A stretch of DNA of 59,716 nucleotides from Mizuhopecten yessoensis (lineage: Eukaryota), in the NCBI RefSeq assembly GCF_002113885.1, contig NW_018406583.1, positions 11,103 to 70,818 of the forward strand, given 5' to 3'. Under the pieces are notes generated by a model. That model made no database searches and was not told the origin of the DNA. It was given only the letters and a program-made list of their open reading frames with translations. Position 1 is the first letter of the stretch, and each line of letters opens with the position of its first letter. Both the position numbers and the translations under genes were made by a program. Of the stretch, positions 10,261 to 46,939 are shown piece by piece.

Positions 10261-11228
10261 ATTGTTTTATTGATGGTTGTCTTGGTTTTAAATAATTTGT
10301 ATTCCAATCTTAATTTGGTCTTATCAAGGGTTTTCTTTATCAATGTTTTGCTGTTAAACTTCTGATTATTTGACAATTGAAATTAGATATATTTGTGGGG
10401 TCCAAATATTGTGGTTTCCTAAAAAAACACACACATTTTGTTGGTACATGAATTTGTGGATTATAAGTACAGAGAATTGTTTTTCGTCAAACTTGTAATT
10501 ACTTTGTGGACCTTTGAATTTGTGGAGGCAGATTACTCATGAAATCAACGAAATAAAAAAAAAGAAAACACAAAAATTAGTGATTTCTCAGTACATTTAT
10601 ACCTGCACTTGGCAAGGAAGAGTTCTATAAACAGTATACATTGTACTATGTGTATGATACAGTGTATTCAATACTGTTTATCATTTTCAGGTGGTTGTAT
10701 TTAATAAATCATAGAAACGTTTTCTTTGATATTAACAATTCATATACCATCAGTTTTCAATTGAAACACAGGGTTTCTTGAACCAGTTACCTGTATGCTG
10801 AGGAAAATTATATAGAAAAATTGACAAGTATGTGAAGGAGAATGACATGTACCCTAAGAATATGAAAATAAAGACAATTTAATAAATTTAATGTGTCCTG
10901 TTTTTTTATCCAATTATTATATCGATCAATCAAATAATGATGAAGCCACCAAGTCAATTAAGAAGTGACATCAACATTCGTTCTGTTTAATTCTGTTTTT
11001 AGTAACAGTGACCTTGATATCAGTAAACCACGTGCACCTCCAACTTCAATGTAGGGGGGATGATAATACAGTGTATTAATCCCTGGATAGAAAGAAACAA
11101 AAGCTTCAGTTGCATATTAAAAAATAAAATTTTATTTCATTTATTTTAACATACACTTAAATTATATCACAAGGAATCTTCACACAAACACTTTCCCAAA
11201 GTCGAAGAACTCTATACAATTTTGTGGA

Positions 11229-11395
11229 TACTGTAAAATCATAAATTTTCGGGGACATCAAATTTCGTTTGTTTCGTGGATAACAAAAATCCACGAAATT
11301 CAATACCCATGAAAACATATATGTAATTTCCTTGAAACAGGAAAGTATATGAAAAACGAAATTTTAACCCAACGAAAATAAGTGATTCTACAGTA
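11229..11395. mobile_element. TA-flanked MITE (TACTGTAAAATCA...TGATTCTACAGTA)
   Basis: Terminal inverted repeats with internal AAATTTCG/CGAAATT sub-repeats. Similar-style elements at about 10385-10593 and 43636-44054. Confidence 0.6.
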
Positions 11396-12393
11396 CGACA
11401 GCTCTTCTGTTCCAATGCAGTGGATCAGAATTAAAGAAATAATTTGAAAAATAGCAATAGTAATCATAATTTGATTAGGGATAATGTATCGTTCCTGGTT
11501 ATATTTTTAAAACCAAAACATGAGGTGCAATATGTTATTGTCCAGGGTTTCAACCCAGCTACAACTACCCGGTACATAAAATTAGACACCACTTTACACT
11601 AATGAATGATGACGTGCTACCACAATAAATACAAGTAAGAGTGACCTCCCTTTTTCCTGGAGAGACTTCCATTGTTGATGGTACCATATTTAACTTAAAT
11701 GCATGTTCTAATAATGTGGGCTCCACAAAACTTTTACTAACGAAGATTAAGGCAAAGTTTGACACAGTTTTGATGATTAATTACGTAACATATTTGACTA
11801 TTAAAAGCTTCAAGTAGCATCTTAAGAGGAGTTTGGATTTCACCTTTCTGAAATGTGTGTTATTACAATTTTGCTAACAAGTTATTCAATTTTATCAATA
11901 TGATAAAACTAATATCTTTCAATCTTTAAAAGAAATCAAAAGTGCTATATGTCACAACATGAAGCTATCACTTTCGGTATTGGTAAATCAGAACTTTTCT
12001 TTGCAAAGCTGTAGATTTTCTGTTCAGATTCAAATAAAGCGATTGAAAAATAAATCTTTGTTTTAGAATGAAGAGGGCCTGGGTGTTGGCATGCTGTCCT
12101 TATATGGGATACTGACTCTACTGAACATTGTGACTGCTCTTAACCAATGTTTTAAGGATTTTCATGTCTGACATGCAGGATAAATCTTTCAGACATAGCT
12201 CATCAAATCAGAAATCCTTTGCATTTCAATTTAATGATAATAAATATTGAATTATTTAACAAGTGGAAATAACAATAATCTATATTTTGCAGCTTCTGTA
12301 CCAATATATTTTCCTTATGGGTTGTACACTATTCATTTGAGAATCCCTGAAGGTAAAAACATTTTCAATTTTTAGTTTTTTGGCATAGCAGTC

Positions 12394-12481
12394 AACTCAT
12401 TCACCCCTGAAATTTCATAATGAACTATTCCAACCTTTGAATTGGAAGAGTTAAAATGTGTCTTCAGGAGTGAAGGTGTTA
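12394..12481. mobile_element. ~90-bp piggyBac-like MITE, family A
   Basis: AACTCATTCACCCCTGAAATTTCATAATGAACTATTCCAACCTTTG...GTTAA. An inverted near-identical copy lies at 55030-55118 in a PSMD1 intron. Confidence 0.7.
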
Positions 12482-12704
12482 AGATATATACAACACTACA
12501 ATATCATTATGATATTCCCAGGAAATGACTTCAATAACACCACTTTGATCGGCCATTTCTTGCTCTGATTAGCTTTAAGAGTTTTAAACACAAACGTTCA
12601 AAATCAAATTTGTATAAAACTTCATATCTGAAAACTTCATTATGAATCTCTCTACAAATATTTGAGTTATGAATTTCAAGTGATTTTAAATTCACTAGAT
12701 TTGA

Positions 12705-12710
12705 TTTATT
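12705..12710 (-). terminator. Candidate polyadenylation signal (AATAAA) of PPOX
   Basis: TTTATT on plus, about 120 nt downstream of the PPOX stop codon. Confidence 0.45.
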
Positions 12711-12827
12711 CATTAACTCAAAAGGTCATCGGCCCTTGAACCACTCAGCAGCTGTGATGATAGCTGTTGTCATGACAACTGCTGAACACGTGTACAAAAG
12801 AGTTCACTGACCGAAGCCACGGTTGGT

Positions 12828-15800
12828 TTAAAAGAGAAAATGCTCATCTTGTATATCTGGAGCTTTGAAAGGTATTGGACCAGTAAAGTGCTCTACTCGC
12901 AGTTTGGCATTGTATATGCAGTCATTAACACTGACTCCTTTATAGGAGGAGCCCACCAAACTCAAAGGTAAATTGTTGTCCTTGATGTACTTGAAAATCC
13001 TCTCCACACGTTCATTATGGCCGACCAAATACTGGGGGATGCAGTCCTAGAAAAGGAAAACATCGCTTTTAGACAAACAAATAAAAAAAAGAATTGGATG
13101 CTACAAATGATTTTTTTCATAAAACTTTTCCAGTTTAAAGTTCAATTTGAAATGAATGAGGTAAATAAAATTTGTTTTGATATTTCTATACCACTTATAA
13201 AAAAATAAAAATAAAGGATATCTGATAGTTTTAGCAGAATGAGAATATCCAATTTTTGTAGTCTCAGTATGTTGACTGACTTTTTTATTGAGAATGTCAA
13301 ATTTCGAGGATTTATGTACAAAATTTTCTTGTGAAAAATTAAGAGTTGTCAAATTAAAAATGTTTCCGAACAAACTTACTGCGTGTACCATCATGTCAAT
13401 TTTCACAGGTGCTTCAATGATGCCTAGATGCTTGGATATCACTTCTGTCGCTAGTCTGGCAACTCTGCTTGGATCTAATGATCCACCCAGTCTCTCCTTT
13501 ACCAGTTCATCATACCATGCTCCACCCATCATCACCTGTCAGTGTAGGAACAAGTCTCCGTCAAAATGAATTACCACTTTCTTGTCATTTACCTAACCCT
13601 TTCACCACTGTAAAGCATAATGGGCTCATTCATATCAATGCATGGTAGAGTCTACTAAAGTTACATAGGGATGAAAGGGTTAAGATAATACTGAATTCTG
13701 TGAAAGGTCTTTTCCTTTTTGAAATTATGCGTGAGGAAATTCATATTGCCTTGCACTCAACAAACATACACGTCTTACGTCGTGTATAAATGATTGCGAA
13801 TTACATGTACATAAAAATAAACAACACACTAAATAAAAGCTATCTTATGTATATGCCTGCATTGTACCTAACTATGAGCCGTGTAGCAGAGTAAATTGTC
13901 TCTGCCTTTTTCATTACTATGGTAATACCGAAGAAATAATAATGTCTGATCAATGTTTACATTCGTATTTCAAATGTGTCAACTAGTCCAAATCACTATT
14001 CACAAAAGATCTAGATCATTCCTACATTTTTTAGGTACGTGGAACTCTTCAAAAAGGAGATACATGTCACAGTAAGGTGGCATATACAGCCTTAAGATTA
14101 GTCCAAATATGCCACGAAATTTTAAATCAACTGTACACTGGGAATCTTTTATCCAGTGAAATATTTTTTCCTTCACCGGTGAAAACCTTACTCAGACAGT
14201 GAACAATTTGCCCTCCACATTTAATTACTACATTTGTATGTAGGGTATGTTGTTAACCGATATTGGGTGTCCTGATAAATTCACTGTATTGCAAAAAGGC
14301 ATAAGTTAGACTGCAGCAGAAATGTTCTGATAAACAGTAGCTTTATGATATGTCCTAACAAGGAAATGTATTGCAAAGCAAACCATGGTCCCCTACAAGC
14401 AATGATTCTTTATTCACCGGTATGTAAACCTATGTAAGGGTCAACCTAGCTACAGTAAAAATGTATCCTGGTATATAATAGCCCGAGTTTCCTCTAGCCC
14501 TGACGCCAGACTTAGACCTTTTGACAGATGGATGTCGGATACCAGGAAACGATCTATCAAAATGTTTAAGTCTGGTGTCGGGGCCAGAGGAAACTTGGAC
14601 TAGGTATCTAATAGGGAAATTCTTTCTAATGATTGCAGTCGAAGGTAAAAAAAAAATATCACAGTGAAGTGCTTTTGTACAGCAAAATCTGTCATCTTAG
14701 GATATACTTGCATACCAAATTTATCGAAAACTGCACTCTGCCATAGTAAGATATACCTGCATACTCAGTACTAAACTTAGTTAATCCTGGTGAAATAACA
14801 GATCCACTCTAGACTAAACATTTCAAAAATTAAGGTCAAAGGTCAAAGCATAGGTCATTGTGACCTTCTTCTCATACTCTGCACTCTACCATTCAAAGTT
14901 GTACTTCCATACAAAATCTGGTTACTCCAGGTAAAAAAGTCTAGGAGACATGCCCTGGACAAACTATTTAAATGATAAAGGTCAAGTTCAAAGCATAGGT
15001 CACAGCAACTCACTTCTTGTTCTCTGCACTCTGCCAGACAAAGAAAAACTTGCATACCAAATTTGGTTATTACAGTTAAGAGTGTATGCTCCAGACAAAC
15101 TTTTTTAATGATTAAGTTCAAAAGTCTAAGCATGAGTCATAGTAACCTACTTCCCATACTCTACACTCTGCCAGCCAAAGAGGAACTTGCACACCAAATA
15201 TGGATAACCCATGTGAAATAATATAGAAGATATGCCCTGGACAATTGTTTTCTCAAAATTTAAGGTCGTAGGTCAAAGCATTGATCACAGTGACCTGCTT
15301 CTCATTACCTGCACTCTGCCATCCCAAGATGTGCTTACATGTAAATACCGGGTTACTCCAGGTGAAAAAAGGAATGAAGATATGCCCGAGACAATCTTTT
15401 CGGATGGATGAAGGGATGGACAAAATGCAAACTTATAGTCCCCATCCACCAACCCCTACCCCGGAAACCGTTGGGGGACAATGTGGGTGTGTAGAGCTCG
15501 CAATTGTACAAGCTACCAAAAATCCCCCTAGCACCAGCCCTTAACAAACATCCCTATGGATGGAAACTCACCGTAAATCTAGAAACTGGTTTATCTGGTA
15601 TGTTTGAGTCGTGTTCTGGAAAGGTACACGAGTCGTACACCACTCCCAGTATAGGTCTATCTTCACAGGACGGTAGTAGGTGGCCAAAACCCTGAGGATC
15701 AGAATAGTCAGAAGATATATCCATGCAGTCTCCTTATTTGTTACATTCAGGGTTGAAACTTTCTTCTAAAGCCATTTTCTTGGATTTTGCTGCAATATCA

Positions 15801-28586: not shown

Positions 28587-28861
28587 GAGATGTCGATCGC
28601 AAAACTTTGAGTCATATAATTGGCCATCGTAGGAAATAATGCACTTTTAATCAAACAATGAATATCGAACAACTCTTGTTTCTTCATTTTGTTGCTACCT
28701 CTGAAGATCGTGCAGTGCCCGATATACCAGTCTTTTGTCTTCTGTCCAACTAGGTCATGTAAATGGCGGGGAAACTACGTCACACGTGTCCCCGGCCTGA
28801 TGTATGATTGTACAATTACACCGTCTTATCTTTCACCAGGAAAATCTATCCGCACTTAAAT

Positions 28862-31800
28862 TCATACATCTGGCATACATGATATAACACCTATACGATT
28901 TATCCTTTTCCCGTTTTGACCACATTCAAAAACTGCACTAGCGTTCCGACAAGTACACATTTGAGAATCAAAGTACATGTCTCTTTTACAAGATTGTGTC
29001 ATCAGTACGGACCCCGTGACACATTTATGGTAAACCCCACAGCTCCAGGAGTCCGGGAACATCCTCCCTGCTGCCTCGTTCGTACAACTATGTGGGGGCT
29101 CTGTAAAACAAAATGAGATAACTCTATTTTTGATATGTGTTGAATATATGATTTAGGTTTCGAAAAAAGAGGGTAGGCAAAAGGTTAAATAGATATTAAA
29201 ATCAACAGATTATAAACAGAACACACACATATTTCTTGATTTTGTCACGTAAAAAACGTATGACTTATTAATGAAACATCATGCCCAAAAAGTTATAATG
29301 AAAAATAAAATTTGTTGAAAATAAAAAAATAAAAAACTACTTCTGCCAAAATCTTTCTAGAGTAGATAAAATGCTGTATAATGTTAAAATACGTGCACTA
29401 CAACAACGACTCAGTTTTGCACATGCGCTCCGAGATATATGACGAACCTGACAAAAATAGACTGTTAGTTGGAATGGAAGACTCTTTCAATCCATATTTT
29501 GTGTATGAAGGGTATGGGCGGCACATCAGCCTTGACATCGATCTCAAAGTAAAATCCATGACAACACCAGAACACTCAATCGACCAGCCCTCTTCGGTAC
29601 TATACAGTGATATGCACGTGAGATTTACGTCATATACAATCGTCACTTTGTTGTCATGACAACCCATCAGTATAACAGGGGCCGGATAACATCCAGAGCG
29701 CAGAGAACAGGTCACTCCATACGACACATTCTCGCCGAAATCTCCCATATCGCGGGACAATTGAATGGACGTTTCGGCAATAACATCTGTGGAAATCAAA
29801 CGTTTTTTACTGTAACAATTAGAGAACAATCAATACATATTTATGATAACACTGTTATGCTGGTTGTCATTTTTGTTGGGGGTACATTGATAGGACGGTA
29901 TTGCCGAGTGAACACAAGGGGCAAAGTGTCTTTAACACATAGGGATTGAATGACTTTTTTTTAAAGATTATTGAGTAGTTCTTGCAAGTAACATATAATA
30001 GAAAATGTGTTTGAACATTGAAAAAACGTTAATCCCTCTATAACATTCTAAATTTACAGCTAGTAATGATTCTATCAATTTGATTCCCTAATATTTGCCA
30101 TATTGAAATATCTGCATCAGATACTGCAATCGTTTCTGTATCAGTGCAGACGAAAATCTTTAAACATCCTAGCATATAAATGTTTGCTTCTTGCAACACC
30201 CTCAAGTCACGCAAGGCGGGAGCAGGCCAACGTGACACCGATATCATTGCGTTTATAGCCCTTATGAACGCAATATCTTTCGGTATTGTTTATGGAAGGG
30301 ACCATATAAGACTGTAATGGCTTAAGTACAATATGTGATAGAAAATAGTCATTGTCTAACAGAGAACTTCAATCACGCGCCGAATGTGTTAGAAATCGTA
30401 TAATCTTATATTTTTCAAGCTATGTATATGACAATGTTTTAGTTTTACCGAAGAAAAGACTGCTTTAATAAAAGCAAATTAGACAAACTCTAGTGTTAGC
30501 TGGCATTGAATTAAGTGTGAATTGCTTATTTTGTGTACATTTTCCGGGGAAAATTAAAACTCTTGCATTGACTTACATCGTATTAAATACAATAGTCAAT
30601 AGATAAATGACAGTTGAAGATTATTAATTCAGGCATTTTTCTCCTATAGTTTTTCATACCTTACCTTTTACATCGATACCAATACTGTGTTCCACGTCAT
30701 CAATTGTGATGCCCACGTGGTACTTTACAGCTCCGGCACACTTGACAGTGCTTCTGGTTAATATCACTTTGTTTCCAAGGTCGCCAATTTTTATGGTCCA
30801 AAGTCTCTTACGATATGTGGAATTTGCTACTAATTTAAATATTTCTATTTCCGGTTCCGCCACAGACTCCATCATTGCGAAACGTAAATGCAAAGTTCGA
30901 TTTACATACGTGGTGTCTAGATCACATTTAATCACTATGCTGCTCTGAAAGTCAATGGTGTCCATGTTCTCGACGTGACAATGAAATGTATGGTCTGAAA
31001 TGAAAGAGGTAAGCATACGTCATTACAACTACACCTACACTCTTTAACAGACAAATAGATAAGGGGGGTACCACACTTATTTCAGTTAAGTACATTGACA
31101 CAATAAGTAAAAGTGGCGGACCCTGCTACATGTAACAGAAACCGGGTTTATCACTATCTTTGACATGTAACATACTCTCATCTCTGCTAGACCAATAACT
31201 TTCACCAGATAGTGTTCGGTTACTTGTTCTTAATATAACTGTTTGGTTTTATCTGTGTCAACAGTTAGATTCAACATTGCAGCTTTTTCTGTAAAAACCG
31301 TGACAAATCTAATTTTGTGTACATTTTCAGAAAATAAAACTCTGTCATTGGTGTACATCGTAGTAAAAACACTAATCTACTTCAATTGGCTCATTTTTTA
31401 TATCATAAAAAAAGATGATGATAACGCTGCCCTTTGTAATAACATTTATGTCAAACATGAAAGACAATTTACCCTGTAGTTTTATGTTATTTGCTTCATT
31501 AAACCTTGACCTCATGGCATTAAGCAAACTACTTCCTGTTCCACTTTCAAACGTTGAAACCAAAAGTTTTCATTTGAAAGACATTCCAATGTCTTTCTAT
31601 CAAAGCCTCCTATTTTGTTTTAAAGCGACATCACGGTGAAGTATATTTTTAACGCCATTTTTTTTAAATGCTGCATAAATATATCAAATGAGTCTCCTAA
31701 TTGTCAATGACAGTGGGATTGCGCCGATACATTTGCATAAAATGTATAATTACTCATAAAAGAGGGGATCCATATATCCTGCCTGGTCACACATTTCATA

Positions 31801-32500
31801 CTGTATTTTCTTGCGTAACATCTAATAACGCATGCGCACATCACGCCATAACGAAATGGCTTGCCGTGTTCAATGCAACCCTAGTATGAAGCTCAGGTTC
31901 AAATCATAATTCCCCATCGATTTCAACAACTTCCGTTGTACTCTATATCAATATCTATATCAATAATATTTTATTAGATAAACAAGTGCACAACTCAGCG
32001 ATGTTATAAGCTAGAATATTTTTCAAAAAATTATTGGTACTGTATTTTTCATACTTTATACTACATCCGCATATGACTTGGTATATCAGCAAGGCACTTA
32101 AAGTATATAAAACACTCATCCATAATTAATTTATGTCACGCGGCTTTAACGTGGAAAAAATGCCGTTTTACGTGTTAGAAAGCCCAACGTATCACCTCTT
32201 TATCTCTAACATTGAAGTCATTGTAGAACATAGAACGTGGAACGATTCCATGCAAGAAAAAGCGACCTGAAAATAACTGGGCGTCAAAATCTCATAATAC
32301 GTTTTTGTACATGTTCGATAAATTGTAATATTGCCTCGATATTTGGCGAAGAGTTGAGGTGTAAACGTGGCCATACCTTTGGGAGGTCTGTGTTGTCTGC
32401 TGTTGAAGACTAGGACCATTATCAGTGCGAGGAATATGAGGACGGACACTGCCACCGGTACTAGCCGGTACACAACCCTCCATTTCGTCTGTGACTTCAT
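28862..32500 (-). CDS. Predicted membrane-anchored or secreted protein with two divergent Ig-like domains and a C-terminal chitin-binding type-2 (CBM14/peritrophin-A) domain, 343 aa
   Basis: Exons (minus): 32500-32377 (MKSQTKWRVVYRLVPVAVSVLIFLALIMVLVFNSRQHRPPK), 30994-30665 (110 codons), 29786-29448 (113 codons; VTCSLRSGCYPAPVILM...LMCRP), 29100-28862 (SCTNEAAGRMFPDSWSCGVYHKCVTGSVLMTQSCKRDMYFDSQMCTCRNASAVFEC). All introns are phase 1, GT-AG; total 1032 nt with no stops. CBM14 is well supported; the Ig assignment is weaker. Confidence 0.78.
31620..32149. mobile_element. TTAA-flanked (Kolobok-like) non-autonomous element in intron 1 of the Ig/CBM14 gene
   Basis: TTAAAGC... at the left and ...GCTTTAA at the right. 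5' part is homologous to 23660 onwards. Confidence 0.5.
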
Positions 32501-34739
32501 CTAAAACTCACAAGAAGATAACAGGAACATTACAACGCCTGTACAGTTATTAATTATACGTATATTCTATACATAACGATATTCATGCATGCTCAGCTAT
32601 ATACATTCGTGACTCCTAAAGTTTCTAGTGACTACCCCCGCGCCCTGTCAGACTTGTAGTAGGGCACGTTGTGTGAGAAAGTCTTTTTTACATAGCAATC
32701 ATGCTGCTGCATTTCTACGTTTGAGTCATATCACTGCTTTATGTATCATTATTTCGAATATTGATAACTTTTGAACATTCACGGGTGAAACAAACAAAAA
32801 TCAATTAAAATACGACGCAATGCTGCCGCTATCTGATTTAATACAATATACAAGTAACTGATAGTGTTACAACATATATATTTACCAGGAGCGTATTTAT
32901 AAACTCAATTTTAGTGATGGGACATAATTTATTTCATAACCTTTTATGGTGTATGATGTGACTTCAAATGAGTAAAAATACATCTATACTTTGCTGTTAA
33001 CATATATGATATATAATGTGTTTAGCAAATGTTCTATTTAAAACGTATTTACACCACAAACATACGCGTATATATTGATTAACATGATGGTTTACTGGCG
33101 TATTTCTAGCGTAACGCAGGAAATAGTTTCATGTTTCATGGACAATAAATGTTGTAATATAGTAAGGCAGGATTCAATTACTATTATCTGTACTCGAAAT
33201 CATATGCGGAAATATTGTCCTTTAGAACAAAATTTGATCGACAAACGTTTTAAGACATACTTTCTCATTCAAGTGTCAACTCTTTATATTATATTTACAT
33301 CTCGCACGTAAAAGCGAGTTCTATACCTTTAAAAGTTGACATTTCACAATTTTGTATACTGGCTTCCGTTTGAAATGTGTTCAGATTTGTTATTGGTTTG
33401 CCGGCATCTCTTTGTCACTATTTACAATAGAGAACACAAACAACACAAACAAGTAAGTCTAAACACTGTTTTTTATAACAAAACATTCCGATTTTGGTCG
33501 CATCTATAGACAATGTTTAGGTCTAAGCCAGGGAAATATGGGGCTCCCCAAAGGGTTAAGCAAATGTCCGACTATTCGGTTATTTATTTTGGTAACCGGT
33601 TCATGGTCTTCCGACCGAGTAGCCGGCTAGCCGTTCACAACCCTCATTTAACGAATGAACAATGACATGTCAAAGGTCTTTTGATAATGCAATCTATGTT
33701 TGATTAATCAAGAATTATCTAATGAAATACTATACCATACATTAATCACTATAAGAAAGCTCATTCACTTATGTGTGATCTAAATAATCATTACATAATC
33801 ATTCATTACTCATGAATTCATTAACCTCCTTATGTTTATGGTAATTCCAAGCACAGGTAAAATTTTATCTCTCATGAAAAAACCCTTAAAAAACCCACAT
33901 AAATCACTTAAAAACGTATCTTAGTACATCAATTTTGTTTTCTCATTTGCGAGAGGTACCTGTGTTTCAAGAGCTCAAATATCTATATGTCATGCTAAAT
34001 CAGTTATAAAATAGAAAAATATATGTTAAATTTCTCCAAAACAACGGAAATTATATAATATTAACAAACAATAATCAGCTAACATACTTACGACATAGTC
34101 CTGCCACAGTCGCGTGTATCTGTAAGATAATTCCAGACTAACACCTCACATCAGGCAAAGCAAACGTGACGTCAGTTTCATTACCAACGCGGTAATACCA
34201 TTTACATTTTCTTCTGTAATATAAATCAATTTAAAGTACATGCAAATGGAATTTGACGAATATGAATATTGCGTTAATGCTCGAGCCGACAGATACTATA
34301 GTAACCCTAGTCTGTTGCTGTCGATGAAATTACAGTTTCCGGTAACTGGCGGTTTTTTGTTTAGATCATTCTAACATCTGGATTAAAAATGTTTACGTTC
34401 TCTTTTCATCAGAAGAGTAATAGCTTGTGTCTGCAAACACCACTTTCGGTTTCAAAAGGTACACTTGTACCTGTGTGAACCATTTACAATCAGTATATAG
34501 ATCTTCCCACACAGCCGCTATCTCTGTGTGTACTCTACACATACGTATCTGTGTGTTAACTATCATCCTATGTACTCCAAACATATGTTAACACTTATAC
34601 ATAGTTGCCGGGAAACGTAACCTTTACTTGTGAATTTCAGAACTTGTGTTTCATTTAGCTAATCACTGATCTAACCTTTGATGATACTACGGAATTAGCT
34701 ATATCTAAGTCTGTGGTGATAGTGAAATATGGTATTTAT

Positions 34740-36175
34740 CATACAAACTATGATATATGTGATCATGCATGTATGAACTACGGTACAACTGGTCAAGGTT
34801 GTATAAACGACGGTATATGTGGTCATACTTGTATGAACTACGGTATGTCATGTTACCTTTGTTTAAACTACGGTATGTCCTATCATGGTTGTATGAACTA
34901 CGGTATGTCCTATCATGGTTGTATAAACTACGGTATGTCATGTCATGGTTGTTTAAATTGAGGTATGTCCTATCATGGTTGTATGAACTACGGTATGTCC
35001 TATCATGGTTGTATAAACTACGGTATGTCCTGTCATGGTTATATGAACTATGGAATGTCCTGACATGGTTGTATGAACTACAGTATGGCCTGTCATGGTT
35101 GAATGAACTACAGTATGTCCTGACATGGTTGTACGCATGAACTATAGTATGTCCTGTCATGGTTGTATCAACTACAGTATGTCCTGTCATGGTTGCATGA
35201 TCTACAGTATGTCCTGACATGGTTGTATGAACTACGGTATGTCATGTCATGGTTGTATGAACTACAATATGTCCTGTCATTGTTGTATGAACTACAGTAT
35301 GTCCTGACATAGTTGTATGCATGAACTACAGTATGTCCTGTCATGGTTGTATGAACTACAGTATTTCCTGACATGGTTGTATGAACTACGGTATGTCCTG
35401 ACATGGCTGTATGCATGAACTACAGTATGTCATGCCATGGTTGTATGAACTACAGTATGTCCTGACTTGGTTTTTGAACTACGGTATGTCCTGTCATGGT
35501 TGTATGAACTACAGTATGTCCTGACATGGTTTTTGAACTACGGTATGTCCTGTCATGGTTGTATGAACTACAGTATGTCCTGTCATGGTTGTATGAACTA
35601 CAGTATGTCCTGACATGGTTGTATGAACTACAGTATTTCCTGACATGTTTGTATGAACTACAGTATGTCCTGACAAGGTTGTATGAGCTACAGTATGTCC
35701 TGACTTGGTTGTATGAACTACAGTATGACCTATCATGGTTGTATGAACTACAGTATGTCCTGACATGGTTGTATTCATGAACTACAGTATGTCCTGTCAT
35801 GGTTGTATGAACTACAGTATGTCCTGTCATGGTTACATGAACTACAGTATGTCCTGACATGGTTGTATGAACTAGGTTATGTCCTGTCATGGTTGCATGA
35901 ACTACAGTATGTCCTGACATGGTTGTATGAACTACGGTATGTCCTGACATGGTTGCATGAACCACAGTATGTCCTGTCATGGTTGTATAAACAACAGTAT
36001 GTCCTGACATGGTTGCATGAGCTACAGTATGTCCTGTCATGGTTGCGTGAACTAGGTTATGTCCTGTCATGGTTGCGTGAACTAGGTTATGTCCTGTCAT
36101 TATTGCATGAACTAGGGTATGTCCTGTCATGGTTGTATGAACAATGGTTCTCCTGTTACGGTTGAATGAACTGTG
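34740..36175. repeat. 30-bp minisatellite (ATGAACTACAGTATGTCCTGTCATGGTTGT)
   Basis: About 45 tandem units with occasional 34-bp variants. Explains the TMTGHTVVHT and YELQYVLSWL ORFs. Confidence 0.97.
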
Positions 36176-37050
36176 GTATATCTGGTAAAGGTCGTTTGGA
36201 AAAGAACAAACGTAATTACGTATATTAACATGTGTGTTATCACTACAGACGGCATGTTAACGTGCATGTGAGTATAACTCTTGATTGATGTATAATATAA
36301 ATTATGTATTTACAGTTATATATAATGAAATAAAAGCTGGATACACATTTTCAATTATGTATATTATGAATATAAACATATATAATAACGTATAACAGTT
36401 ATATATACATACATTAGTATGCATTAGAAATTAGATATACATGTACATTTATAATTATCTATACCAGCTATAAATACATTCATAATTATGAATAACAGCT
36501 ACATGTAGATATACATACATAATTCTATGTTTACTTTATATTTAATTACTCGAGGCATATATGATTATATGCAAGTTTAAAAAAGTACATAACTACATAT
36601 ACCTACAAACTGCATATTAAAACTGAACTAAATAAATACTACTTATATATACATATTTACCTGCTCTCTCAGTCCTTGCACGTGCATGAATACGAAGGTT
36701 GTGAATATCTTACCCCTGCACAACAGCCTTCAGTCATACAAATTGTAATAAATCTTAATCAAAACGGACATACACTAATGTTTCGATACTGTGTGATGGT
36801 AGACACAAAATACAGCTGTGTATTATCATGCAGTACATCACTGACGGCCAGCTGACCACTATCACGTGAGGGCGCGTGCTTCTGTCCATCACCTGTCTGA
36901 GCTACGGATACCGACCACATTTATCATTCTAAACATACGAGAATAAACGTCATCACAATTCACTGAATCAAACAATTCAATATTCGCTGGAAAATTTACG
37001 AGGCCAATGGCGAGTTATCATAGCTATAAAGACAAGAAGTGTAACATAAT

Positions 37051-37400: not shown

Positions 37401-38057
37401 CATGATATGCCTTCTTTGGTTTACCACAATTACCATTAAACGGTATTGGCCGATGAAGCGTTTACCTAGCGTAGTCGTATACAGTTGTGTTAAAAAGAAC
37501 AAGAGTTTAAAAGATCTAGCTAATAGGCTTTTTTAATCAATCATTAATGCAATTGTTGATTATTGAATTGTCACACAGTATATTACTGATAAATACAGTC
37601 ATATGGTAATCTAAAAACTGTCTACATTGTCCTGCCAATTCTGAGCCAATTTTGGCTTACGAGACACTATAGTCATTAAAATACAATTAACAATTACATT
37701 TACAAAAAGAGGACACCCTTATTGCATTACAATCTATTATCAGGATAAATGTTTTCTTCGTTTAAACAAAGAATAACAGGCAAGAAAGACGTAAATATAA
37801 AGATAGTCATAAGGATTATTTTTTTCATTTCAGTTATACACAGACGTCATTAAATACTTAATATATCAGTGTTAAAGGTAGATATGCCTAAACGAAAATT
37901 ATAAAGAAAATAAACATATGTTGCATAAGGCTTGACAGGTGCCACATATTGTCTAGATGAGCTTACTATTCCCGACTCTCCAGTCGTTTCTGTAGTGGTT
38001 TTAATCCCCAATTCCCGGTATTGTATTTTTGTATCAATTTTGAATCGGTTTTTGCCT

Positions 38058-39960
38058 TGTTGTTGACGCTGTGGTATATTTTGACCATGTGTGTTGACGC
38101 TGTAGTATATTTTGTCCATATTTGTTGACGCTGTGGTATATTTTGTCCATGTGTATTGACGCTGTGGAGTTTTTATCCATGTGTGTTGACGCTGTGGTAT
38201 ATTTTGTCCATATGTATTGACGCTGTGGTATATTTTGTCCATGTGTGTCAATGTTGTAGGTTTTTTTTGTCCATATGTGTTGACGCTGTGGTATATTTTG
38301 TCCCTGTGTGTTGACGCTGTACTATATATTTTGTCCATATTTGTTGACGCTGTGGTATATTTTGTCCATGTGTGTTGACGCTGTGGTATATTTTGTCCAT
38401 ATGTGTTGACGCTGTGGTATATTTTGTCCATGTGTGTTGACGCTGTAGTATATTTTGTCCATGTGTATTGACGCTGTGGAGTTTTATCCATGTGTGTTGA
38501 CGCTGTAGTATTTTTTGTCCATGTGTGTTGACGCCGTGGTATATTTTGTGCATATGTGTTGACGCTGTGGTATATTTTTTCCATATGTATTGACGCTGTG
38601 GTATATTTTGTCCATGTGTGTCGATGTTGTAGTATTTTTTGTCCATGTGTGTTGACGCCGTGGTATATTTTGTGCATATGTGTTGACGCTGTGGTATATT
38701 TTGTCCATATGTATTGACGCTGTGGTATATTTTGTCCCTGTGTGTTGACGCTGTAGTAGATTTTGTCCATATTTGTTGACGCTGTGTTATATTTTGTCCA
38801 TGTGTGTTGACGCTGTGGAGTTTTTTTATCCATGTGTGTTGACGCTGTGGTATATTTTGTCCATATGTATTGACGCTGTGGTATATTTTGTCCATGTGTG
38901 TTGACGCTGTAGTGTATTTTGTCCATGTGTGTCGATGTTGTAGTATATTTTGTCCATGTGTGTCGATGATGTTGTATGTTAATTAATGTGTGTTGACGCT
39001 GTGGTATATTTTGTGCATATGTGTTGACGCTGTGGTATATTTTGTCCATATTTGTTGACGCTGTGGTATATTTTGTCCATGTGTGTTGACGCTGTAGTAT
39101 ATTTTGTCCATGTGTGTCGATGTTGTAGTATATTTTGTCAATGTGTGTCGATGTTGTAGTATATTTTGTCCATGTGTGTCGATGTTGTTGTATGTTAATT
39201 AATGTGTGTTGACGCTGTGGTATATTTTGTGCATATGTGTTGACGCTGTGGTATATTTTGTCCATATTTGTTGACGCTGTGGTATATTTTGTCCATGTGT
39301 GTTGACGCTGTAGTATATTTTGTCCATGTGTGTCGATGTTGTAGTATATTTTGTCAATGTGTGTCGATGTTGTAGTATATTTTGTCCATGTGTGTCGATG
39401 TTGTGTACATTTTGTCAATGTGTGTCGATGTTGTAGTATATTTTGTCCATGTGTGTCGATGATGTGGTATAATTTTCCATGTATGTTGACGCCGTGTTGA
39501 CGCCGTGGAGTATTTTATCGATGTGTGTTTACGCTGTGGTATATATTGTCCATGTGCGTGACGCCGTGGGGTATTTTTTCCAGGGGTGATGACGCTGAGA
39601 GGTTTTCGTTCTTGAGGTTTGACACTGTGGTACTAAGTATATATCTATATTTCACTTTGCTTTTCAAATGTTTCAAATACTGTTTTCCTTTGAATTTCAA
39701 CATTTTTTCATGTGTCGATGATGTGGTATATTTTGTCCATGTGTGTCGATGTTGTAGTATATTCTGTCCATGTGTGTCGATGTTGTAGTATATTTTGTCC
39801 ATGTGTGTCGATGATGTGGTATATTTTTCCATGTATGTTGACGCCGTGTTGACGCCGTGGAGTATTTTATCGATGTGTGTTTACGCTGTGGTATATATTG
39901 TCCATGTGCGTGACGCCGTGGGGTATTTTTTCCAGGGGTGTTGACGCTGAGAGGTATTCG
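38058..39960. repeat. 31-bp minisatellite (GTTGACGCTGTGGTATATTTTGTCCATGTGT) with a ~352-bp duplication at its right end
   Basis: About 50 units. GTATGTTGACGCCGTGTTGACGCCGTGGAG occurs at 39481 and 39833, each followed by the same unique tail (to about 39710 and 40062). Confidence 0.97.
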
Positions 39961-41335: not shown

Positions 41336-43459
41336 CTAGGACAGACGCCATCCTGAGAACATTGCCTTGCCATAAACACTACTACTATGTATGATTCCAC
41401 TAAATTTAGACCGGATAAACACGTGATCTCCTACACTGACTGACGTCACAATCACACCGGTGGTACTATCCCAAGCATGCCCTGTTTCCGCATCAGAGAA
41501 TATGGAACCCTGGGACAACCCGTTAATGACAAGTTCCGTCACAACGTTGTCTGTCGTGGTTCCAGTGGTCAGCCAGGTGAATACGTACACCCCACTGACC
41601 GGAACTGTGTATACACCATCTCCTGCATGATAGTGATCATCCATGTCCAGTAGGACTTCATCGAATGCTATCACTAGATTGGGATGTAAATTCAAATCTC
41701 TTCCACTCAAAGAAACGCTGAATGCTCCTGCTCCATTAGGCGCAACTCTGACTGCAATAACAAAACAAAAACAGTTTATTAAGCGATTGTTATATATGCC
41801 GTAATATGTTGTGACTCCCTTTAAACCACATTGTAGGTTTATGCTTACTTTCCTGGAATATGTCATAGCAAAATCGAAATCTCAGTGTGCACCACCTTGT
41901 GGGTGGGACAGAAGAACTTGTTTGATCCTTTGATGTACATCAATAATAAATTATTGATGGGCAGCTAATATTTTGGATAATAAAATAATGTGAATGTAAA
42001 AATATAAATAAATTAATGTATGCTATAGTATAATGTGGTGTTGTAGCTTACCAGATCGTGAGGGCTGTTCATCCTTACACTTCCTTAATGGTTTCGTTTT
42101 AGATGTTGCGTTGATGCCATCTTTGGGATTCTCTTCAGGCCAATTGGAATCGGAGACACGGTCGGGAAACTCAGTGAGACGTTTGTCCGTCCAATCTTGG
42201 GATTGTTTTGATACTGATTTCAGCTCTCGCTCCAGCTGGTCAATACGGATTTCTTTTCGCTTCAGATCCTCCTCGTTGCTCCTGACCGTCATCTCCAGCA
42301 GCTGTAACCTGTTGTCCTGACGTTCTATCCTTTCCAATAACGATTCCACCAGACGTCTAAGCGATTCCTCTGTGGACACTTCTCTGCAACGATTATTCAT
42401 TACGATTCGTTCACTTCATCCAGAGAATATGTTATAGCAAAATCGAAGGCTAAGTGTTTGCCACCTTATGAATGAGACAAGAAGACTAGTTTGATATTTT
42501 GGTGTACATCAAAAACATATCGTGACATTGACTAGATTTGAAGACAGGTGTCGCTCCTCTCTAATCTAATCAAAGGATAGCTATCAATGGGCGCAGCGAG
42601 TGTAAGCGAGAGTCATCCCGAGAATTTCGAGGATATACGATCTGTGACACGCCTAAGCGGCTTATGACTGTTATTAAATACTAAAATGAGACATAAAGGC
42701 ATATCAGCAACTTGCTTTATAGAAATTTTTAGCAACACCCGACCTCGATACTCCCGGGGTTAAGCTCACTTTCGCTCTCTGTACCCCTGTAATATGTCAT
42801 AGCAAAATTGAAGGGTTAGATGCACCCTCTTGTGGATGACTTTGAAGTCGGGTGACGCTTCTCTGTAAATCTTCAAAGATATAATCATCCTAAGGGATCG
42901 GATTTTTTTTTTTTACCCAAGACCAATGAAATAGCTTGCCGCGTGCCTTCGTTTTTGCTATAACATATTCCATGGGCACAGAGTGCTAAAGTGAGCGTAA
43001 CCCCTGGAGAATCGCGGATGAGAAATATCAAGCATATATGGAACTTATCATATTCCTCATTGGCTTTTTTATGACAGTAACCTACACGTAACTTTTTAGA
43101 AATTCATGTCATCAATTAATCAGACGTTTGATGACAATGTTCTGCAATAAGGTTTAGACGTTTTAAAAGCTCACCTACTCATGATATCTTGCCATGAAAC
43201 TATACTTACTCTTTGTGTGTCTCTTGAAATAACTTGGGTGTAGTTGTTATTTTTGTGTACATGAATTGCATTTAGTATTACTATATATTTTTACTGTTGT
43301 TCTAACTAAGTTTTGTATGGAATACACCAGCATATCTTACCTATGGTCAATGTTCACGTCAGATGGACTAACGTCCGGGCGAGAATTTTCGGTCGGACTC
43401 TCCTTAGCCGTGCCATGGACCACAAAACTCAGGACGAGGGCGAGACGCAGCCAGTACAT
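41336..43459 (-). CDS. Secreted C1q-domain-containing protein (signal peptide, coiled coil, gC1q), paralogue A, 288 aa
   Basis: Exons 43459-43341 (MYWLRLALVLSFVVHGTAKE...), 42383-42052 (heptad-rich LRRLVESLLERIERQDNRLQLLE), 41751-41336 (AFSVSLS...FDEVLLD...GVYTVPVSGVYVFTW...VSVGDHVFIR...MFSGWRL). Intron phases 2 and 1; 867 nt. Confidence 0.93.
42743..43019. mobile_element. MITE family C in intron 1 of C1qDC-A (further fragments at about 41850-41940 and 42400-42635)
   Basis: CCTCGATACTCCCGGGGTTAAGCTCACTTTCGCTCTCTGTACCCC at the left and GGGCACAGAGTGCTAAAGTGAGCGTAACCCCTGGAGAATCGCGGAT at the right. Confidence 0.75.
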
Positions 43460-45427: not shown

Positions 45428-46939
45428 CTACGATAATCGCCATCCCGAGAACATCGCATTGCTGTAGATGTTGTCACTGTGTAAGTTGCCTGAGTATTTA
45501 GACCTGATAAACACGTGATCTCCAACACTGGCTGACGTCACAATCAAACCGGTGCTACTATCCCAATGAGCGGCATCCGGGTCAGAAAAAATTCTACCCC
45601 GCGGTGAGCCGTTAATTACCAGCTCTGTAACAACGTTAGCTGTTGATTCTCCTGTCGTAATCCAGGTGAATACATACACACCGCTAACCGGAACAATGTA
45701 TACTCCATCTGCCTTGTTGTAGTTACCTCCGATGTCCAGGAGAACTTCGTCAAACGTCAAAACAAAATTAGGATGTAAATCCTGATTCTTGCTTAAGGAA
45801 ACGCTAAAGGCTCCAACTTCTCCGGAGTTAGCTGGTGACACCCTAGCTGTAATTATAAAATAAGAAGTTTATTGCGTATCACGAGTTTAACTAGGAACAT
45901 ACATCTTCTGTGTAAATCTGTTATCGTGGATTCTTTAAATATTTTACTTATTTAATATGTTCAGCGAAGTGTCAATTGACTTATGCAATAGTGACCGGCC
46001 GGATGACTGAACATGATTCACACACCATACAATCGAGACCATTGAAGGTCATGTTGTCACTCACCGGACCTTCGAGGTTGCTCATCTTTTGTTTTCTGTC
46101 TAGATGTGATACCATTGATTTTACTCTTGGTCTGTTCTAGGGGTGAATCGGGATTGATGTCGTGGTCTTGAGCCTCGGACTGCTGACGTTCATCCACAGG
46201 AGGCTGGATTTGATATGACGCTGTTTTTATTTCATCAAGTTCTCGTTCCAGATGACCTATTCGGATGTCCTTACGCTTCAAATCCTCTATGTTTTCCTCG
46301 ATAGTCTTCTCCATCTGTTGTAGTCTTATCTCCTGAAGTTCGACCCGCTCCATCAAAGATTCCACAAAGTGTCTCAGCGGCGCGTTCGATGACGCTGTCC
46401 TACAACAAACACTTGTCATAATGCAGTACAACAATTCCATTGCAAATGCTAGGGCTTCATGTAAAGATGTATGTAACCGAATTGCGTTCATACCGGCATG
46501 AATATTGAAAAATGCCGTTTAATCCCTTAATTTACATTCAAACCTGATCAAAGTTTCTCTGTCACCTCCGAGAAGAGGGTTTTCTGTCATCCCTATGGTA
46601 ATACATATACTCTATTTCCTTCACATCGGTGAGAGGGAATGATCATCCCCGTGGTGAGTGTATACCAAAGAAATTTCATCACTTGGGGTTAGATTTTTGA
46701 GTATCTTAATTGTGCGGCTTGAAGCAAGCCTCGGGTAAGACATTCAAGAATATCACCACTCGGATTAAGATTTCTCTGTCATACCTTCACGGTCTTCACG
46801 ATTAAGGGCGTTAAATTTACCTGTCGCCATTTCTCACATCGGCTTGGCTGGTGTACGTCCCTGCCTTTTCTACCGGACTCTCCTCCGCAGTACCACGGGT
46901 CGCTAAAGTCAGGACGAAGACGAAATACAACCAATCCAT
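45428..46939 (-). CDS. Secreted C1q-domain-containing protein (signal peptide, coiled coil, gC1q), paralogue B, 290 aa
   Basis: Exons 46939-46821 (MDWLYFVFVLTLATRGTAEE...), 46399-46065, 45846-45428 (AFSVSLSKNQDL...GVYIVPVSGVYVFTW...MFSGWRLS). Same phases and exon-1 length (119 nt) as paralogue A; 873 nt. Confidence 0.93.

What the first reader, a model, noticed from the sequence alone, without database searches (positions are those of the whole stretch)
28862..32500. VCBP-like architecture (anchor/signal + Ig + Ig + chitin-binding CBM14) in a probable mollusc
Seen: four exons splice into an uninterrupted 343-aa frame. It has a basic N-terminus plus a ~20-residue hydrophobic helix, two phase-1/phase-1 exons of 110 and 113 codons, and a final exon with the six-Cys pattern C-x14-C-x5-C-x10-C-x12-C-x8-C and the FPD..SC..Y..C and YFD motifs of CBM14. 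Known: two Ig V domains plus a C-terminal chitin-binding domain defines the VCBP immune proteins of amphioxus and Ciona, while mollusc Ig-lectin hybrids (FREP/CREP/GREP) use other lectin domains. Inference: this may be a convergent, possibly type II membrane-tethered chitin sensor or shell/gut-matrix protein. The Ig call rests on exon size, phase and partial motifs only.
Basis: partly seen in the sequence, partly recalled or inferred. Interest (0 to 1): 0.8.

Follow-up and report, generated by a model that had tools for sequence, protein, structure and literature searches.

The report
Scallop membrane-anchored Ig–Ig–chitin-binding protein
This is a real, expressed scallop gene for a cell-surface protein whose two antibody-like domains hold a chitin-binding module away from the membrane; it belongs to an unstudied family found across bivalves and resembles, but is not, the VCBP gut-immunity proteins of sea squirts and amphioxus.

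Summary
Four minus-strand coding exons (32500-32377, 30994-30665, 29786-29448, 29100-28862) have GT..AG introns and phase-1 boundaries. Transcript contigs from three independent studies join them exactly, and one 1059-nt contig spans all four. The product is identical to the 343-aa NCBI protein 'uncharacterized protein LOC110452227' of Mizuhopecten yessoensis.

A non-coding 5' exon (from 34092) with an in-frame stop fixes the start codon.

Exon 4 is a CBM14 (peritrophin-A) chitin-binding domain by Pfam and by a family profile against chitinase CBM14s.

Exons 2 and 3 hit no Ig model by sequence. AlphaFold2 models (pLDDT about 81) fold them as a nine-strand V-type and a seven-strand constant-type Ig sandwich, closest to V-C ectodomains such as butyrophilin, PD-L1/2 and CD80.

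Same-architecture relatives occur across Bivalvia, with one domain per exon. Outside scallops they carry cytoplasmic tails of 47-177 aa before the single TM helix, so this is a type II membrane protein, not a secreted one.

It is single-copy, and the three transcript assemblies show no differences in the Ig exons. It therefore resembles VCBP but fails VCBP membership (V+C rather than V+V, anchored, not diversified).

The most likely role is as a membrane tether or sensor for chitin. That function, the tissue of expression and the range outside bivalves are all untested.

The parts
34092..34253 (-). Non-coding 5' UTR exon (minimum extent). It is spliced onto the start codon and contains six upstream ATGs and an in-frame stop.
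   Evidence: Loose ends of 162 nt (X1) and 53 nt (X2) beyond 32500 map uniquely to 34092-34121. The donor is GTAAGT at 34091. An in-frame TGA lies 18 codons before the ATG. The uATGs are listed.
32377..32500 (-). Coding exon 1: a 12-aa basic cytoplasmic stub (MKSQTKWRVVYR), the signal-anchor TM helix and a short juxtamembrane linker. It ends in phase 1.
   Evidence: The joint 30994/32377 appears in the RNA contigs. There is a single hydrophobic window with mean Kyte-Doolittle score 3.11.
32405..32464 (-). Predicted transmembrane signal-anchor (about residues 13-32, LVPVAVSVLIFLALIMVLVF).
   Evidence: the best 19-residue hydrophobic window (residues 13-31) is the only strongly hydrophobic segment. 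There are 4 K/R and no D/E on the N-terminal side. In non-pectinid homologues the same helix follows tails of 47-177 aa.
30665..30994 (-). Coding exon 2 (phase 1/1, 110 codons): domain D1, a V-type Ig-like sandwich of nine predicted strands. It lies next to the membrane.
   Evidence: No Pfam hit. AF2 model, with block pLDDT 76-92. VIA-align gives Z 9.2-10.6, rmsd about 3.0 Å over about 103 residues to TCR V, VH, CD300lf and CLM-1. Foldseek E is about 1e-7 to Fab chains. C65, W107 and C127 are invariant in the family.
29448..29786 (-). Coding exon 3 (phase 1/1, 113 codons): domain D2, a constant-type (C2/C1-like) Ig-like sandwich of seven predicted strands. It is the most conserved part of the family.
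   Evidence: No Pfam hit. AF2 models. VIA-align gives Z 8.2-9.7, rmsd 2.7-3.7 Å over 82-105 residues to CL/CH, IgNAR C, MHC Ig-like constant domains, B7-H6 and butyrophilin IgC, CD22, KIT and Rst D2. The atlas search returns C1/C2-set clusters. Invariant residues are C178, S179, S182, C184, N206, C209, Y213, G218, C223 and C240.
28862..29100 (-). Coding part of exon 4: linker, CBM14 chitin-binding domain, a C-terminal tail with two extra conserved Cys (313 and 339), and the stop codon.
   Evidence: Pfam CBM_14 E 1.3e-5, 25.7 bits against a cutoff of 22.1. Relatives score up to 36.6 bits. The family profile hits the CBM14 of chitinases 6g9c (2.4e-7), 3w4r and 5wus, chitotriosidase 6so0 and squid beak protein 7bwe. 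Block pLDDT is 84-90.
28922..29086 (-). CBM14 six-cysteine core (residues 270-324), with the aromatic positions F279-P280, Y288 and Y307-F308 retained.
   Evidence: The coordinates are computed from the exon frame.
28700..28861 (-). 3' UTR (minimum extent shown). An ATTAAA lies at 28651-28646, but transcript contigs run on past 28700.
   Evidence: Depth and pieces: contigs of X1, X2 and X4 cover 28700-28861, and X1 and X4 overhang the laid stretch by 177-272 nt.

Best explanation
The gene encodes a single-pass type II membrane glycoprotein. In order, it has:
- a 12-residue basic cytoplasmic stub;
- an uncleaved signal-anchor helix;
- a membrane-proximal V-type Ig-like domain (D1);
- a constant-type Ig-like domain (D2);
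- a membrane-distal CBM14 chitin-binding module at the C-terminal tip.

What is shown:
- the exon structure and its expression as spliced RNA;
- the CBM14 assignment;
- predicted Ig-like folds for D1 and D2;
- the same architecture, with one domain per exon, in bivalves from protobranchs to heterodonts;
- single-copy status in the scallop genome.

What is inferred:
- The two Ig domains act as a rigid stalk of roughly 8 nm, and possibly as a cis/trans contact surface, presenting the CBM14 to extracellular chitin.
- The protein therefore tethers the expressing cell to chitin or senses it. Candidate chitin sources are the animal's own matrices (shell organic framework, gastric shield, gill rods, gut lining) or foreign chitin.
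- Because scallops have lost the long cytoplasmic tail kept by other bivalves, the scallop protein more likely works as an adhesive tether or co-receptor than as a self-sufficient signalling receptor.
For: Gene model and expression:
- Exact splice joints appear in three studies, and one contig spans all four coding exons.
- The product is identical to P0001, LOC110452227.
- A 5' UTR exon with an in-frame stop fixes the start codon.

CBM14:
- Pfam scores are at or above the gathering threshold in the query and in most relatives.
- The family profile hits the CBM14 of solved chitinases at 2.4e-7.

Ig folds:
- The AF2 models have pLDDT 80.7 and 81.4, and pTM 0.69 and 0.75.
- Foldseek returns at least 500 PDB hits at E<=1e-3, with Fab chains aligned over about 220 columns.
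- VIA-align matches D1 to V domains at Z about 10.
- Both domains together align over 172-198 residues to the V-C ectodomains of the BTN2A1-BTN3A1-BTN3A2 complex, PD-L2, PD-L1, CD80, Rst/SYG-1/Neph1, Lutheran and CD166.
- D2 alone matches constant-type Ig domains.
- Protein-language-model neighbours are Ig families.
- The symmetric phase-1 exons, one domain each, are typical of IgSF genes.

Type II topology:
- Every member has exactly one strongly hydrophobic segment.
- The N-terminal tail is 12 aa in scallops and 47-177 aa in other bivalves.
- K/R are enriched on the N-terminal flank.
- 16-18 Cys lie C-terminal of the helix, and N-glycosylation sequons are more frequent there (4-9, against 0-5 in the tails). 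They include the invariant N206-x-T sequon.

Orthology: the upstream C1q neighbour and the four-exon structure are conserved in Pecten maximus.
Against: - No Ig Pfam model and no PDB sequence matches D1 or D2. Family profiles give only a marginal CEACAM1 hit (E 0.007) and nothing for D1 or D2 alone. The Ig assignment therefore rests on predicted structures from a shallow 26-row alignment, with Z scores only 2-3 units above the tool's stated background.
- In D1 the second family Cys (C127) lies before the predicted F strand rather than at the canonical position.
- No signal-peptide or topology predictor could be run, so cleavage of the scallop's short N-terminus, which would give a secreted form, is not excluded.
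- Chitin binding is inferred from family membership. The scallop domain scores exactly at the Pfam threshold when the whole protein is scanned (22.1 bits).
- Tissue of expression is unknown. The single raw RNA run laid had no reads.
Confidence: 0.62

Rival explanations
1. A secreted, VCBP-like soluble effector. In scallops the short N-terminus would act as a cleavable signal peptide, or the ectodomain would be shed. That would release a soluble Ig-Ig-CBM14 protein that coats chitin-rich mucus or microbes, as Ciona VCBP-C does.
For: - The pectinid N-terminal region is only 12 aa, so it looks superficially like a signal peptide.
- The domain order Ig-Ig-CBD matches that of VCBPs as described in PMC7947342.
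- An RQHR (RxxR) motif follows the helix in the scallop.
Against: - The hydrophobic core is 19-20 residues long, typical of a membrane span rather than of a signal-peptide h-region.
- No small-x-small cleavage motif follows the helix in any pectinid, and the RxxR motif is absent from the other three scallops.
- All non-pectinid relatives carry 47-177 aa before the same helix, which rules out a classical signal peptide for the family.
- D2 is constant-type, not V-type.
Confidence: 0.15
2. An immune pattern-recognition receptor for foreign (fungal or parasite) chitin. The V-type domain would contribute to recognition, analogous to the mollusc Ig-lectin hybrids (FREP, CREP, GREP, QREP, HREP).
For: - It combines Ig domains with a carbohydrate-binding domain, as in the gastropod Ig-lectin families described in PMC8878817.
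- The gene lies next to C1q-domain genes, a bivalve immune-lectin family, in two scallops.
- D1 is the fastest-evolving domain: 53% identity within Pectinidae against 69% for D2.
Against: - The gene is single-copy, even when the genome is searched with a family profile.
- There are no nucleotide differences in exons 2-3 among three transcript assemblies and the reference.
- The scallop protein lacks a signalling tail.
- C1q genes are numerous in bivalves (established knowledge), so the adjacency carries little weight.
Confidence: 0.2
3. An adhesion or recognition molecule in which the CBM14 is a degenerate, cysteine-knotted cap that no longer binds chitin. Function would reside in Ig-mediated protein contacts, as in the structurally similar B7, nectin and IrreC families.
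For: - The best two-domain structural neighbours are cell-cell recognition ectodomains: PD-L1/2, CD80, Rst/SYG-1/Neph1 and CD166.
- D2, not the CBM14, is the most conserved domain.
- The scallop CBM14 is borderline in Pfam.
Against: - The six-Cys core and the aromatic positions of CBM14 are retained.
- The family profile matches active chitinase CBM14s at 2.4e-7.
- The CBM14 is kept in every full-length member.
Confidence: 0.1

Closest known systems
[quoted passage not shown]
   Same: Two N-terminal Ig-type domains are followed by a single C-terminal chitin-binding domain, giving one Ig-lectin polypeptide of about 340 aa. VCBP-C binds gut chitin through its CBD (PMC7947342).
   Different: - VCBPs have a leader peptide and are secreted, whereas this family is type II membrane-anchored.
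- VCBPs have two V-type domains, whereas here D1 is V-type and D2 constant-type.
- VCBPs form small multigene families (four genes in Ciona). Amphioxus VCBPs show high allelic diversity in their Ig domains (PMC4346834).
- This gene is single-copy, and three transcript assemblies show no variation in the Ig exons.
- No chordate protein was retrieved by the exhaustive D2 search.
- Direct sequence comparison with a VCBP could not be run.
Mollusc Ig-lectin hybrids (FREP, CREP, GREP, QREP, HREP)
   Same: One or two Ig-like domains are fused to a C-terminal carbohydrate-binding domain in a mollusc.
   Different: - Those families are secreted and gastropod-restricted.
- At least the FREPs are diversified.
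- They use fibrinogen, C-type lectin, galectin, C1q or H-type lectin domains (PMC8878817).
- This family is bivalve, membrane-anchored and single-copy, and uses CBM14.
V-C2 ectodomains of the B7/butyrophilin, nectin/CD166 and IrreC (Rst, SYG-1, Neph1) families
   Same: They are the best two-domain structural matches: Z 9.3-10.6 over 172-198 aligned residues, with a V-type domain followed by a constant-type domain.
   Different: - Those are type I proteins with the V domain farthest from the membrane, and they carry no lectin module. Here the polarity is reversed, with the V-type domain next to the membrane.
- There is no detectable sequence similarity.
CBM14 / peritrophin-A (ChtBD2) proteins: chitinase C-terminal domains, peritrophins, and mollusc shell-matrix proteins such as Pif
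   Same: The C-terminal domain meets the Pfam CBM_14 model and matches the CBM14 of solved chitinases, chitotriosidase and a squid beak chitin-binding protein.
   Different: - Known CBM14 proteins are secreted enzymes or matrix proteins (established knowledge).
- A single CBM14 on an Ig stalk with a type II anchor was not found in the literature searched.
- The family adds two conserved Cys (313 and 339) to the six-Cys core.

Membership tests
VCBP | Leader peptide; secreted soluble protein | tested here: not met
   There is a single 19-20-residue hydrophobic helix. It is preceded by 12 aa in scallops and by 47-177 aa in other bivalves, with K/R on the N-terminal side and no cleavage motif. No SignalP or DeepTMHMM was available.
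VCBP | Two tandem V-type Ig domains | tested here: not met
   D1 has nine strands and matches V domains. D2 has seven strands and matches constant-type domains.
VCBP | Single C-terminal chitin-binding domain | tested here: met
   Pfam CBM_14 at residues 270-324. Profile hits to chitinase CBM14s.
VCBP | Sequence homology to chordate VCBPs | not testable with these tools
   No VCBP sequence was obtainable by reference. The exhaustive search with D2 returned only bivalve proteins and unrelated bacterial BNR-repeat proteins.
VCBP | Multigene family or hyperpolymorphic V region | tested here: not met
   One copy in the 988-Mb assembly with exon queries and with a D2 profile. There are no differences in exons 2-3 in three transcript assemblies. 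The sample is small.
Immunoglobulin superfamily (fold level) | Two-sheet Greek-key β-sandwich matching solved Ig domains | tested here: met
   AF2 pLDDT about 81. Foldseek E about 1e-7. VIA-align Z 8-10.6 with rmsd about 3 Å over 90-105 residues per domain.
Immunoglobulin superfamily (sequence level) | Match to an Ig Pfam model, or the canonical Cys...Trp...Y-x-C signature | tested here: not met
   There is no Pfam Ig hit at E<=10. There is no PDB sequence hit for either domain or for their profiles, except CEACAM1 at E 0.007 for the two-domain profile. W107 and C127 of D1 are not at canonical spacings.
Immunoglobulin superfamily (gene structure) | One domain per symmetric phase-1 exon | tested here: met
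   Exons 2 and 3 are 330 and 339 nt and phase 1/1. The same domain-per-exon layout is found in Pecten, Saccostrea and Solemya.
CBM14 / peritrophin-A | Six-Cys pattern and a score at or above the Pfam gathering threshold | tested here: met
   25.7 bits on exon 4 and 22.1 bits on the whole protein, against a cutoff of 22.1. Relatives score 16.8-36.6 bits. The spacing is x14, x5, x10, x12, x8.
CBM14 / peritrophin-A | Actual binding of chitin | not testable with these tools
   This needs a pull-down with recombinant protein.
Mollusc FREP/CREP/GREP-type Ig-lectin proteins | Secreted; fibrinogen, C-type lectin or galectin C-terminal domain; gastropod | tested here: not met
   Here the lectin domain is CBM14, the protein is membrane-anchored, and all members found are bivalves.

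The most novel reading that the evidence does not exclude
Bivalves independently assembled an Ig + chitin-binding receptor by shuffling phase-1 exons, and uniquely mounted it in type II orientation. The family would then be a lophotrochozoan, membrane-bound counterpart of chordate VCBPs. It would work at chitin-containing barriers (gut lining, gastric shield, mantle-shell interface) to couple epithelial cells to chitin or to report on it. Type II IgSF membrane proteins are, to my knowledge, very rare.
Probability: 0.3. Interest if true: 0.75.

Novelty: new variant of a known kind. Interest (0 to 1): 0.55.

Why it matters
Ig-lectin chimeras are a recurring invertebrate way of recognising carbohydrates. 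An Ig + chitin-binding combination has so far been tied to protochordate VCBPs and their role in gut chitin and microbiome homeostasis.

A conserved, expressed, bivalve-wide family with the same domain logic, but with a membrane anchor and a V-C stalk, would matter for three reasons:
- It suggests the combination arose more than once. This is not yet established, because direct comparison with VCBPs could not be run.
- It offers a handle on how bivalve epithelia attach to or sense chitin, in shell formation, the gastric shield or the gut barrier.
- It adds two Ig-like domains that current sequence models (Pfam) miss. IgSF counts in molluscs are therefore underestimates.

The family includes commercially important oysters, mussels, clams and scallops, in which RNAi and expression atlases make tests feasible.

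Tried and rejected
- Pfam on exons 1-3: no credible family.
- phmmer of D1 and D2 against PDB sequences: nothing at E<=10.
- Family profiles against PDB sequences: D1 gave nothing and D2 only noise. The two-domain profile gave only marginal CEACAM1 hits.
- hhalign of D1 against D2: no relation, probability 0.2%.
- Paralogues: none in the window by tblastn, and none in the genome with exon 2, exon 3 or the D2 family profile.
- Word-index search with the full-length alignment recovered only pectinid and Mya proteins. The search with an oyster D2+CBM14 region found only oysters. Neither gave a non-bivalve member, but neither search is sensitive enough to prove absence.
- Hits P0010 and P0015-P0021 of the big search were examined and rejected. 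Most are bacterial BNR/Asp-box repeat proteins that match a short motif many times, and none shows the family's architecture.
- The raw RNA run X20 had no reads on the locus, so it gave no information on strand or expression level.
- Literature searches by locus and accession names, 'VCBP-like', and Ig + ChtBD2 + mollusc found no description of this family.
- Earlier scan notes near the locus: none.
- A furin-type shedding site (RQHR) was considered and rejected, because it is not conserved among scallops.
- A C1-set assignment for D2 was considered. C1 and C2 neighbours are tied within one Z unit, and the two-residue C-C' hairpin favours C2, so it is left as 'constant-type'.
Full report
**Observation**

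The feature lies on the minus strand. Reading the sequence and locating splice motifs gives four coding exons:
- 32500-32377: ATG at 32500, 41 codons plus 1 nt.
- 30994-30665: 330 nt.
- 29786-29448: 339 nt.
- 29100-28862: TGA stop at 28864-28862.

The exons are separated by GT..AG introns of 1382, 878 and 347 nt with polypyrimidine tracts. All three boundaries are phase 1. The CDS is 1032 nt (343 aa).

The exhaustive protein search with exon 3 returned a 343-aa database protein, P0001. The four exon translations sit in it at residues 1-41, 43-151, 153-264 and 266-343, with D, D and E at the split codons. All later work on the full-length protein used that stored protein. Its source name is 'uncharacterized protein LOC110452227 [Mizuhopecten yessoensis]', so the 'probable mollusc' is the Yesso scallop.

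**Expression and splicing**

Fourteen runs guessed to be RNA hold 17-35% of the sampled words of the 3.9-kb stretch, about the exonic share. Laying three of them, from three studies, gave contigs with joints at exactly 29100/29448, 29786/30665 and 30994/32377 (CT..AC on the plus strand, i.e. GT..AG on the minus strand). One 1059-nt contig of X2 covers all four exons.

Contigs of X1 and X2 continue beyond 32500 into sequence that maps uniquely to 34092-34121. A non-coding 5' exon (at least 34092-34253, donor GTAAGT) is therefore spliced directly onto the ATG. In the frame of the ATG it carries a TGA 18 codons upstream, so the 343-aa ORF is complete at its N-terminus.

The raw RNA run X20 had no reads on the locus and says nothing.

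Differences from the reference in these contigs are few:
- L24M in the membrane helix.
- V336D in the C-terminal tail.
- Two synonymous changes.
- None in exons 2-3.

**Domains by sequence**

Pfam finds only CBM_14 (PF01607). It scores 25.7 bits on exon 4 alone and 22.1 bits on the whole protein, against a cutoff of 22.1. The spacing C-x14-C-x5-C-x10-C-x12-C-x8-C is present, with two additional Cys at 313 and 339.

A profile of the family's C-terminal half hits the CBM14 modules of solved chitinases (6g9c at 2.4e-7; 3w4r; 5wus). It also hits chitotriosidase (6so0) and a squid beak chitin-binding protein (7bwe).

Exons 2 and 3 match no Pfam family at E<=10 and no PDB sequence. Protein-language-model neighbours were mostly Ig families but scored below 0.9, so they are leads only.

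**The family**

The exhaustive HMMER search with exon 3 found 23 proteins at E<=1e-3.

Eight of them (P0010, P0015-P0021) are unrelated. Six are bacterial BNR/Asp-box repeat proteins that match a short motif repeatedly, and the other two show no family domain.

The rest are bivalve proteins or unnamed fragments:
- Pectinid orthologues: Pecten maximus 61% identity, Ylistrum balloti 62%, Argopecten irradians 55%.
- Relatives at 20-25% identity: Solemya velum (a protobranch), Saccostrea, Crassostrea/Magallana (two loci in M. gigas), Mytilus, Mya arenaria, Sinanodonta (partial) and Tegillarca (partial).

None has a functional name. All full-length members align over TM, D1, D2 and CBM14. Conserved residues are:
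- D1: C65, W107 and C127.
- D2: a strong signature (C178, S179, S182, C184, N206, C209, Y213, G218, C223, C240).
- CBM14: the cysteines plus an H-x-C and a Y/F-F motif.

D2 is the most conserved domain and D1 the least.

Mapping proteins onto genomic loci shows the same layout, with one exon each for TM, D1, D2 and CBM14, in Pecten, Saccostrea and Solemya. Oysters have five further upstream exons that encode the cytoplasmic tail.

In both scallops a C1q-domain gene lies upstream on the same strand, which supports orthology.

In the scallop's own 988-Mb assembly the gene is single-copy. This holds with exon 2, with exon 3 and with a 22-sequence D2 profile at E<=1.

**Topology**

Every member has exactly one strongly hydrophobic 19-residue window (mean Kyte-Doolittle score 2.3-3.25; the next best is at most 1.5). 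It is preceded by 12 aa in scallops and by 47-177 aa elsewhere. There are 2-6 K/R in the 15 residues before the window and 0-3 after it. Nearly all cysteines (16-18 against 0-3) lie after it, and N-glycosylation sequons are more frequent there (4-9 against 0-5).

No small-x-small cleavage motif follows the helix, and the scallop's RQHR is not conserved among scallops.

The family is therefore a type II (N-in, C-out) signal-anchor protein. In scallops the tail has been reduced to a stub, and the upstream exon has become non-coding. No dedicated predictor was available, so this remains an inference from composition and homology.

**Folds**

With a 26-row alignment, AlphaFold2 modelled residues 40-268 at mean pLDDT 80.7 and pTM 0.69. 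The model shows two all-β domains of nine and seven strands.

Foldseek against the PDB gave at least 500 hits at E<=1e-3. The top hits are Fab chains aligned over about 220 columns (E about 1e-7).

The Foldseek-independent VIA-align search gave:
- For D1, V-type domains (TCR V, VH, nanobodies, CD300lf, CLM-1) at Z 9.2-10.6, rmsd about 3.0 Å over about 103 residues.
- For both domains together, V-C ectodomains at Z 9.3-10.6 over 172-198 residues: a chain of the BTN2A1-BTN3A1-BTN3A2 complex, PD-L2, PD-L1, CD80, Rst, SYG-1, Neph1, Lutheran and CD166.

A second model, of residues 150-343, had pLDDT 81.4 and pTM 0.75. It placed D2 among constant-type domains at Z 8.2-9.7:
- CL, CH, IgNAR C1-C4 and the Ig-like constant domains of MHC molecules.
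- B7-H6 and butyrophilin IgC.
- The C2-set domains of CD22, KIT, Rst and CD166.

Foldseek was weaker for this model (E about 2e-3), and the ESM Atlas search gave C1/C2-set clusters.

C1 and C2 neighbours are tied. The two-residue C-C' hairpin in the model suggests C2. The tool states that a best Z of 7-8 is common background, so these scores are supportive rather than overwhelming. The V-only and C-only composition of the two hit lists, together with the phase-1 one-domain exons, makes an IgSF origin the best reading.

That includes D1's non-canonical C127 and the odd total of 17 ectodomain cysteines.

**Mechanism**

What is shown is a membrane-anchored polypeptide whose C-terminal, membrane-distal module is a bona fide CBM14 on a two-Ig stalk. 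It is conserved across Bivalvia, expressed, and single-copy.

What is inferred is that it binds chitin outside the cell and so ties the cell surface to a chitinous structure or reports its presence. The missing tail in scallops argues for tethering or a co-receptor role there.

Whether the relevant chitin is endogenous (shell framework, gastric shield, gill rods, gut lining) or foreign cannot be decided without expression data. I put endogenous-matrix attachment somewhat ahead of immune sensing, because of the single copy, the lack of variation in the Ig exons and the strong conservation of D2.

**Comparison with known systems**

VCBPs are defined by a leader peptide, two V-type Ig domains and a C-terminal chitin-binding domain, and they are secreted (PMC7947342). 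This protein shares the Ig-Ig-CBD order and a chitin-binding C-terminus. It fails three other tests: secretion, V+V, and diversification.

Gastropod Ig-lectin hybrids (FREP, CREP, GREP, QREP, HREP) use other lectin domains and are secreted (PMC8878817).

The structural neighbours of the B7, nectin and IrreC families are type I proteins without lectin modules.

No paper in the searchable library mentions these loci or a 'VCBP-like' mollusc protein.

I therefore class it as a new variant of a known kind: an Ig-lectin chimera analogous to VCBP, and not a member of that family.

**Limits**

- No VCBP sequence could be obtained by reference, so convergence against distant homology was not tested.
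- The range outside bivalves rests on a single-sequence search that barely reached Mya (E about 1e-3), so absence elsewhere is not established.
- Chitin binding, topology and tissue of expression are untested.

Noticed in passing
window 41339-41866 (-) and 45431-45841 (-): Two ORF-exons encode C1q domains (Pfam E 2.8e-16 and 6e-19), upstream of the gene on the same strand. A C1q gene sits in the same relative position in Pecten maximus (L003 1737-3074), so this neighbourhood is syntenic.
   Followed up: partly
window 38050-39949: A 31-bp minisatellite runs for about 1.9 kb: a core array of about 47 copies at 38050-39496, then further degenerate blocks. It accounts for the strong GC/AT-skew anomaly in the 38-40 kb composition bin. 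A second, 30-bp array lies at about 36000-36179.
   Followed up: partly
window 34092-34253 (-) and the junction with 32500: The 5' leader exon carries six upstream ATGs. The last one forms a two-codon uORF (ATG TCA TGA) across the splice junction, and its stop overlaps the main start codon (ATGA). This is a possible translational control element.
   Followed up: partly
window 28753-28848: One transcript contig of run X2 replaces 94 nt of the 3' UTR with 38 other letters and carries V336D (28887 A>T). It is probably an indel-bearing allele.
   Followed up: no
window 29664-30443 and 31844-31974: Run X1 has low-depth contigs inside introns 1 and 2. This indicates unspliced pre-mRNA or DNA carry-over in that library.
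   Followed up: no
window 7456-8088 (+): An ORF matches DUF7869 (E 3.5e-7). It may be a remnant of a mobile element.
   Followed up: no
P0010, P0015-P0021: Most are bacterial BNR/Asp-box repeat proteins (PSII_BNR). They reach E<1e-3 against scallop D2 through many short matches to the Y-S-x-E-E-G-W-S motif. This shows how repeat proteins can contaminate an exhaustive search.
   Followed up: yes
L004 (Saccostrea) 10951-13146: The cytoplasmic tail of the oyster homologue is encoded by five small extra exons. An N-G motif in that tail is shared by Solemya, oysters, mussels and Mya, and has been lost with the tail in scallops.
   Followed up: partly
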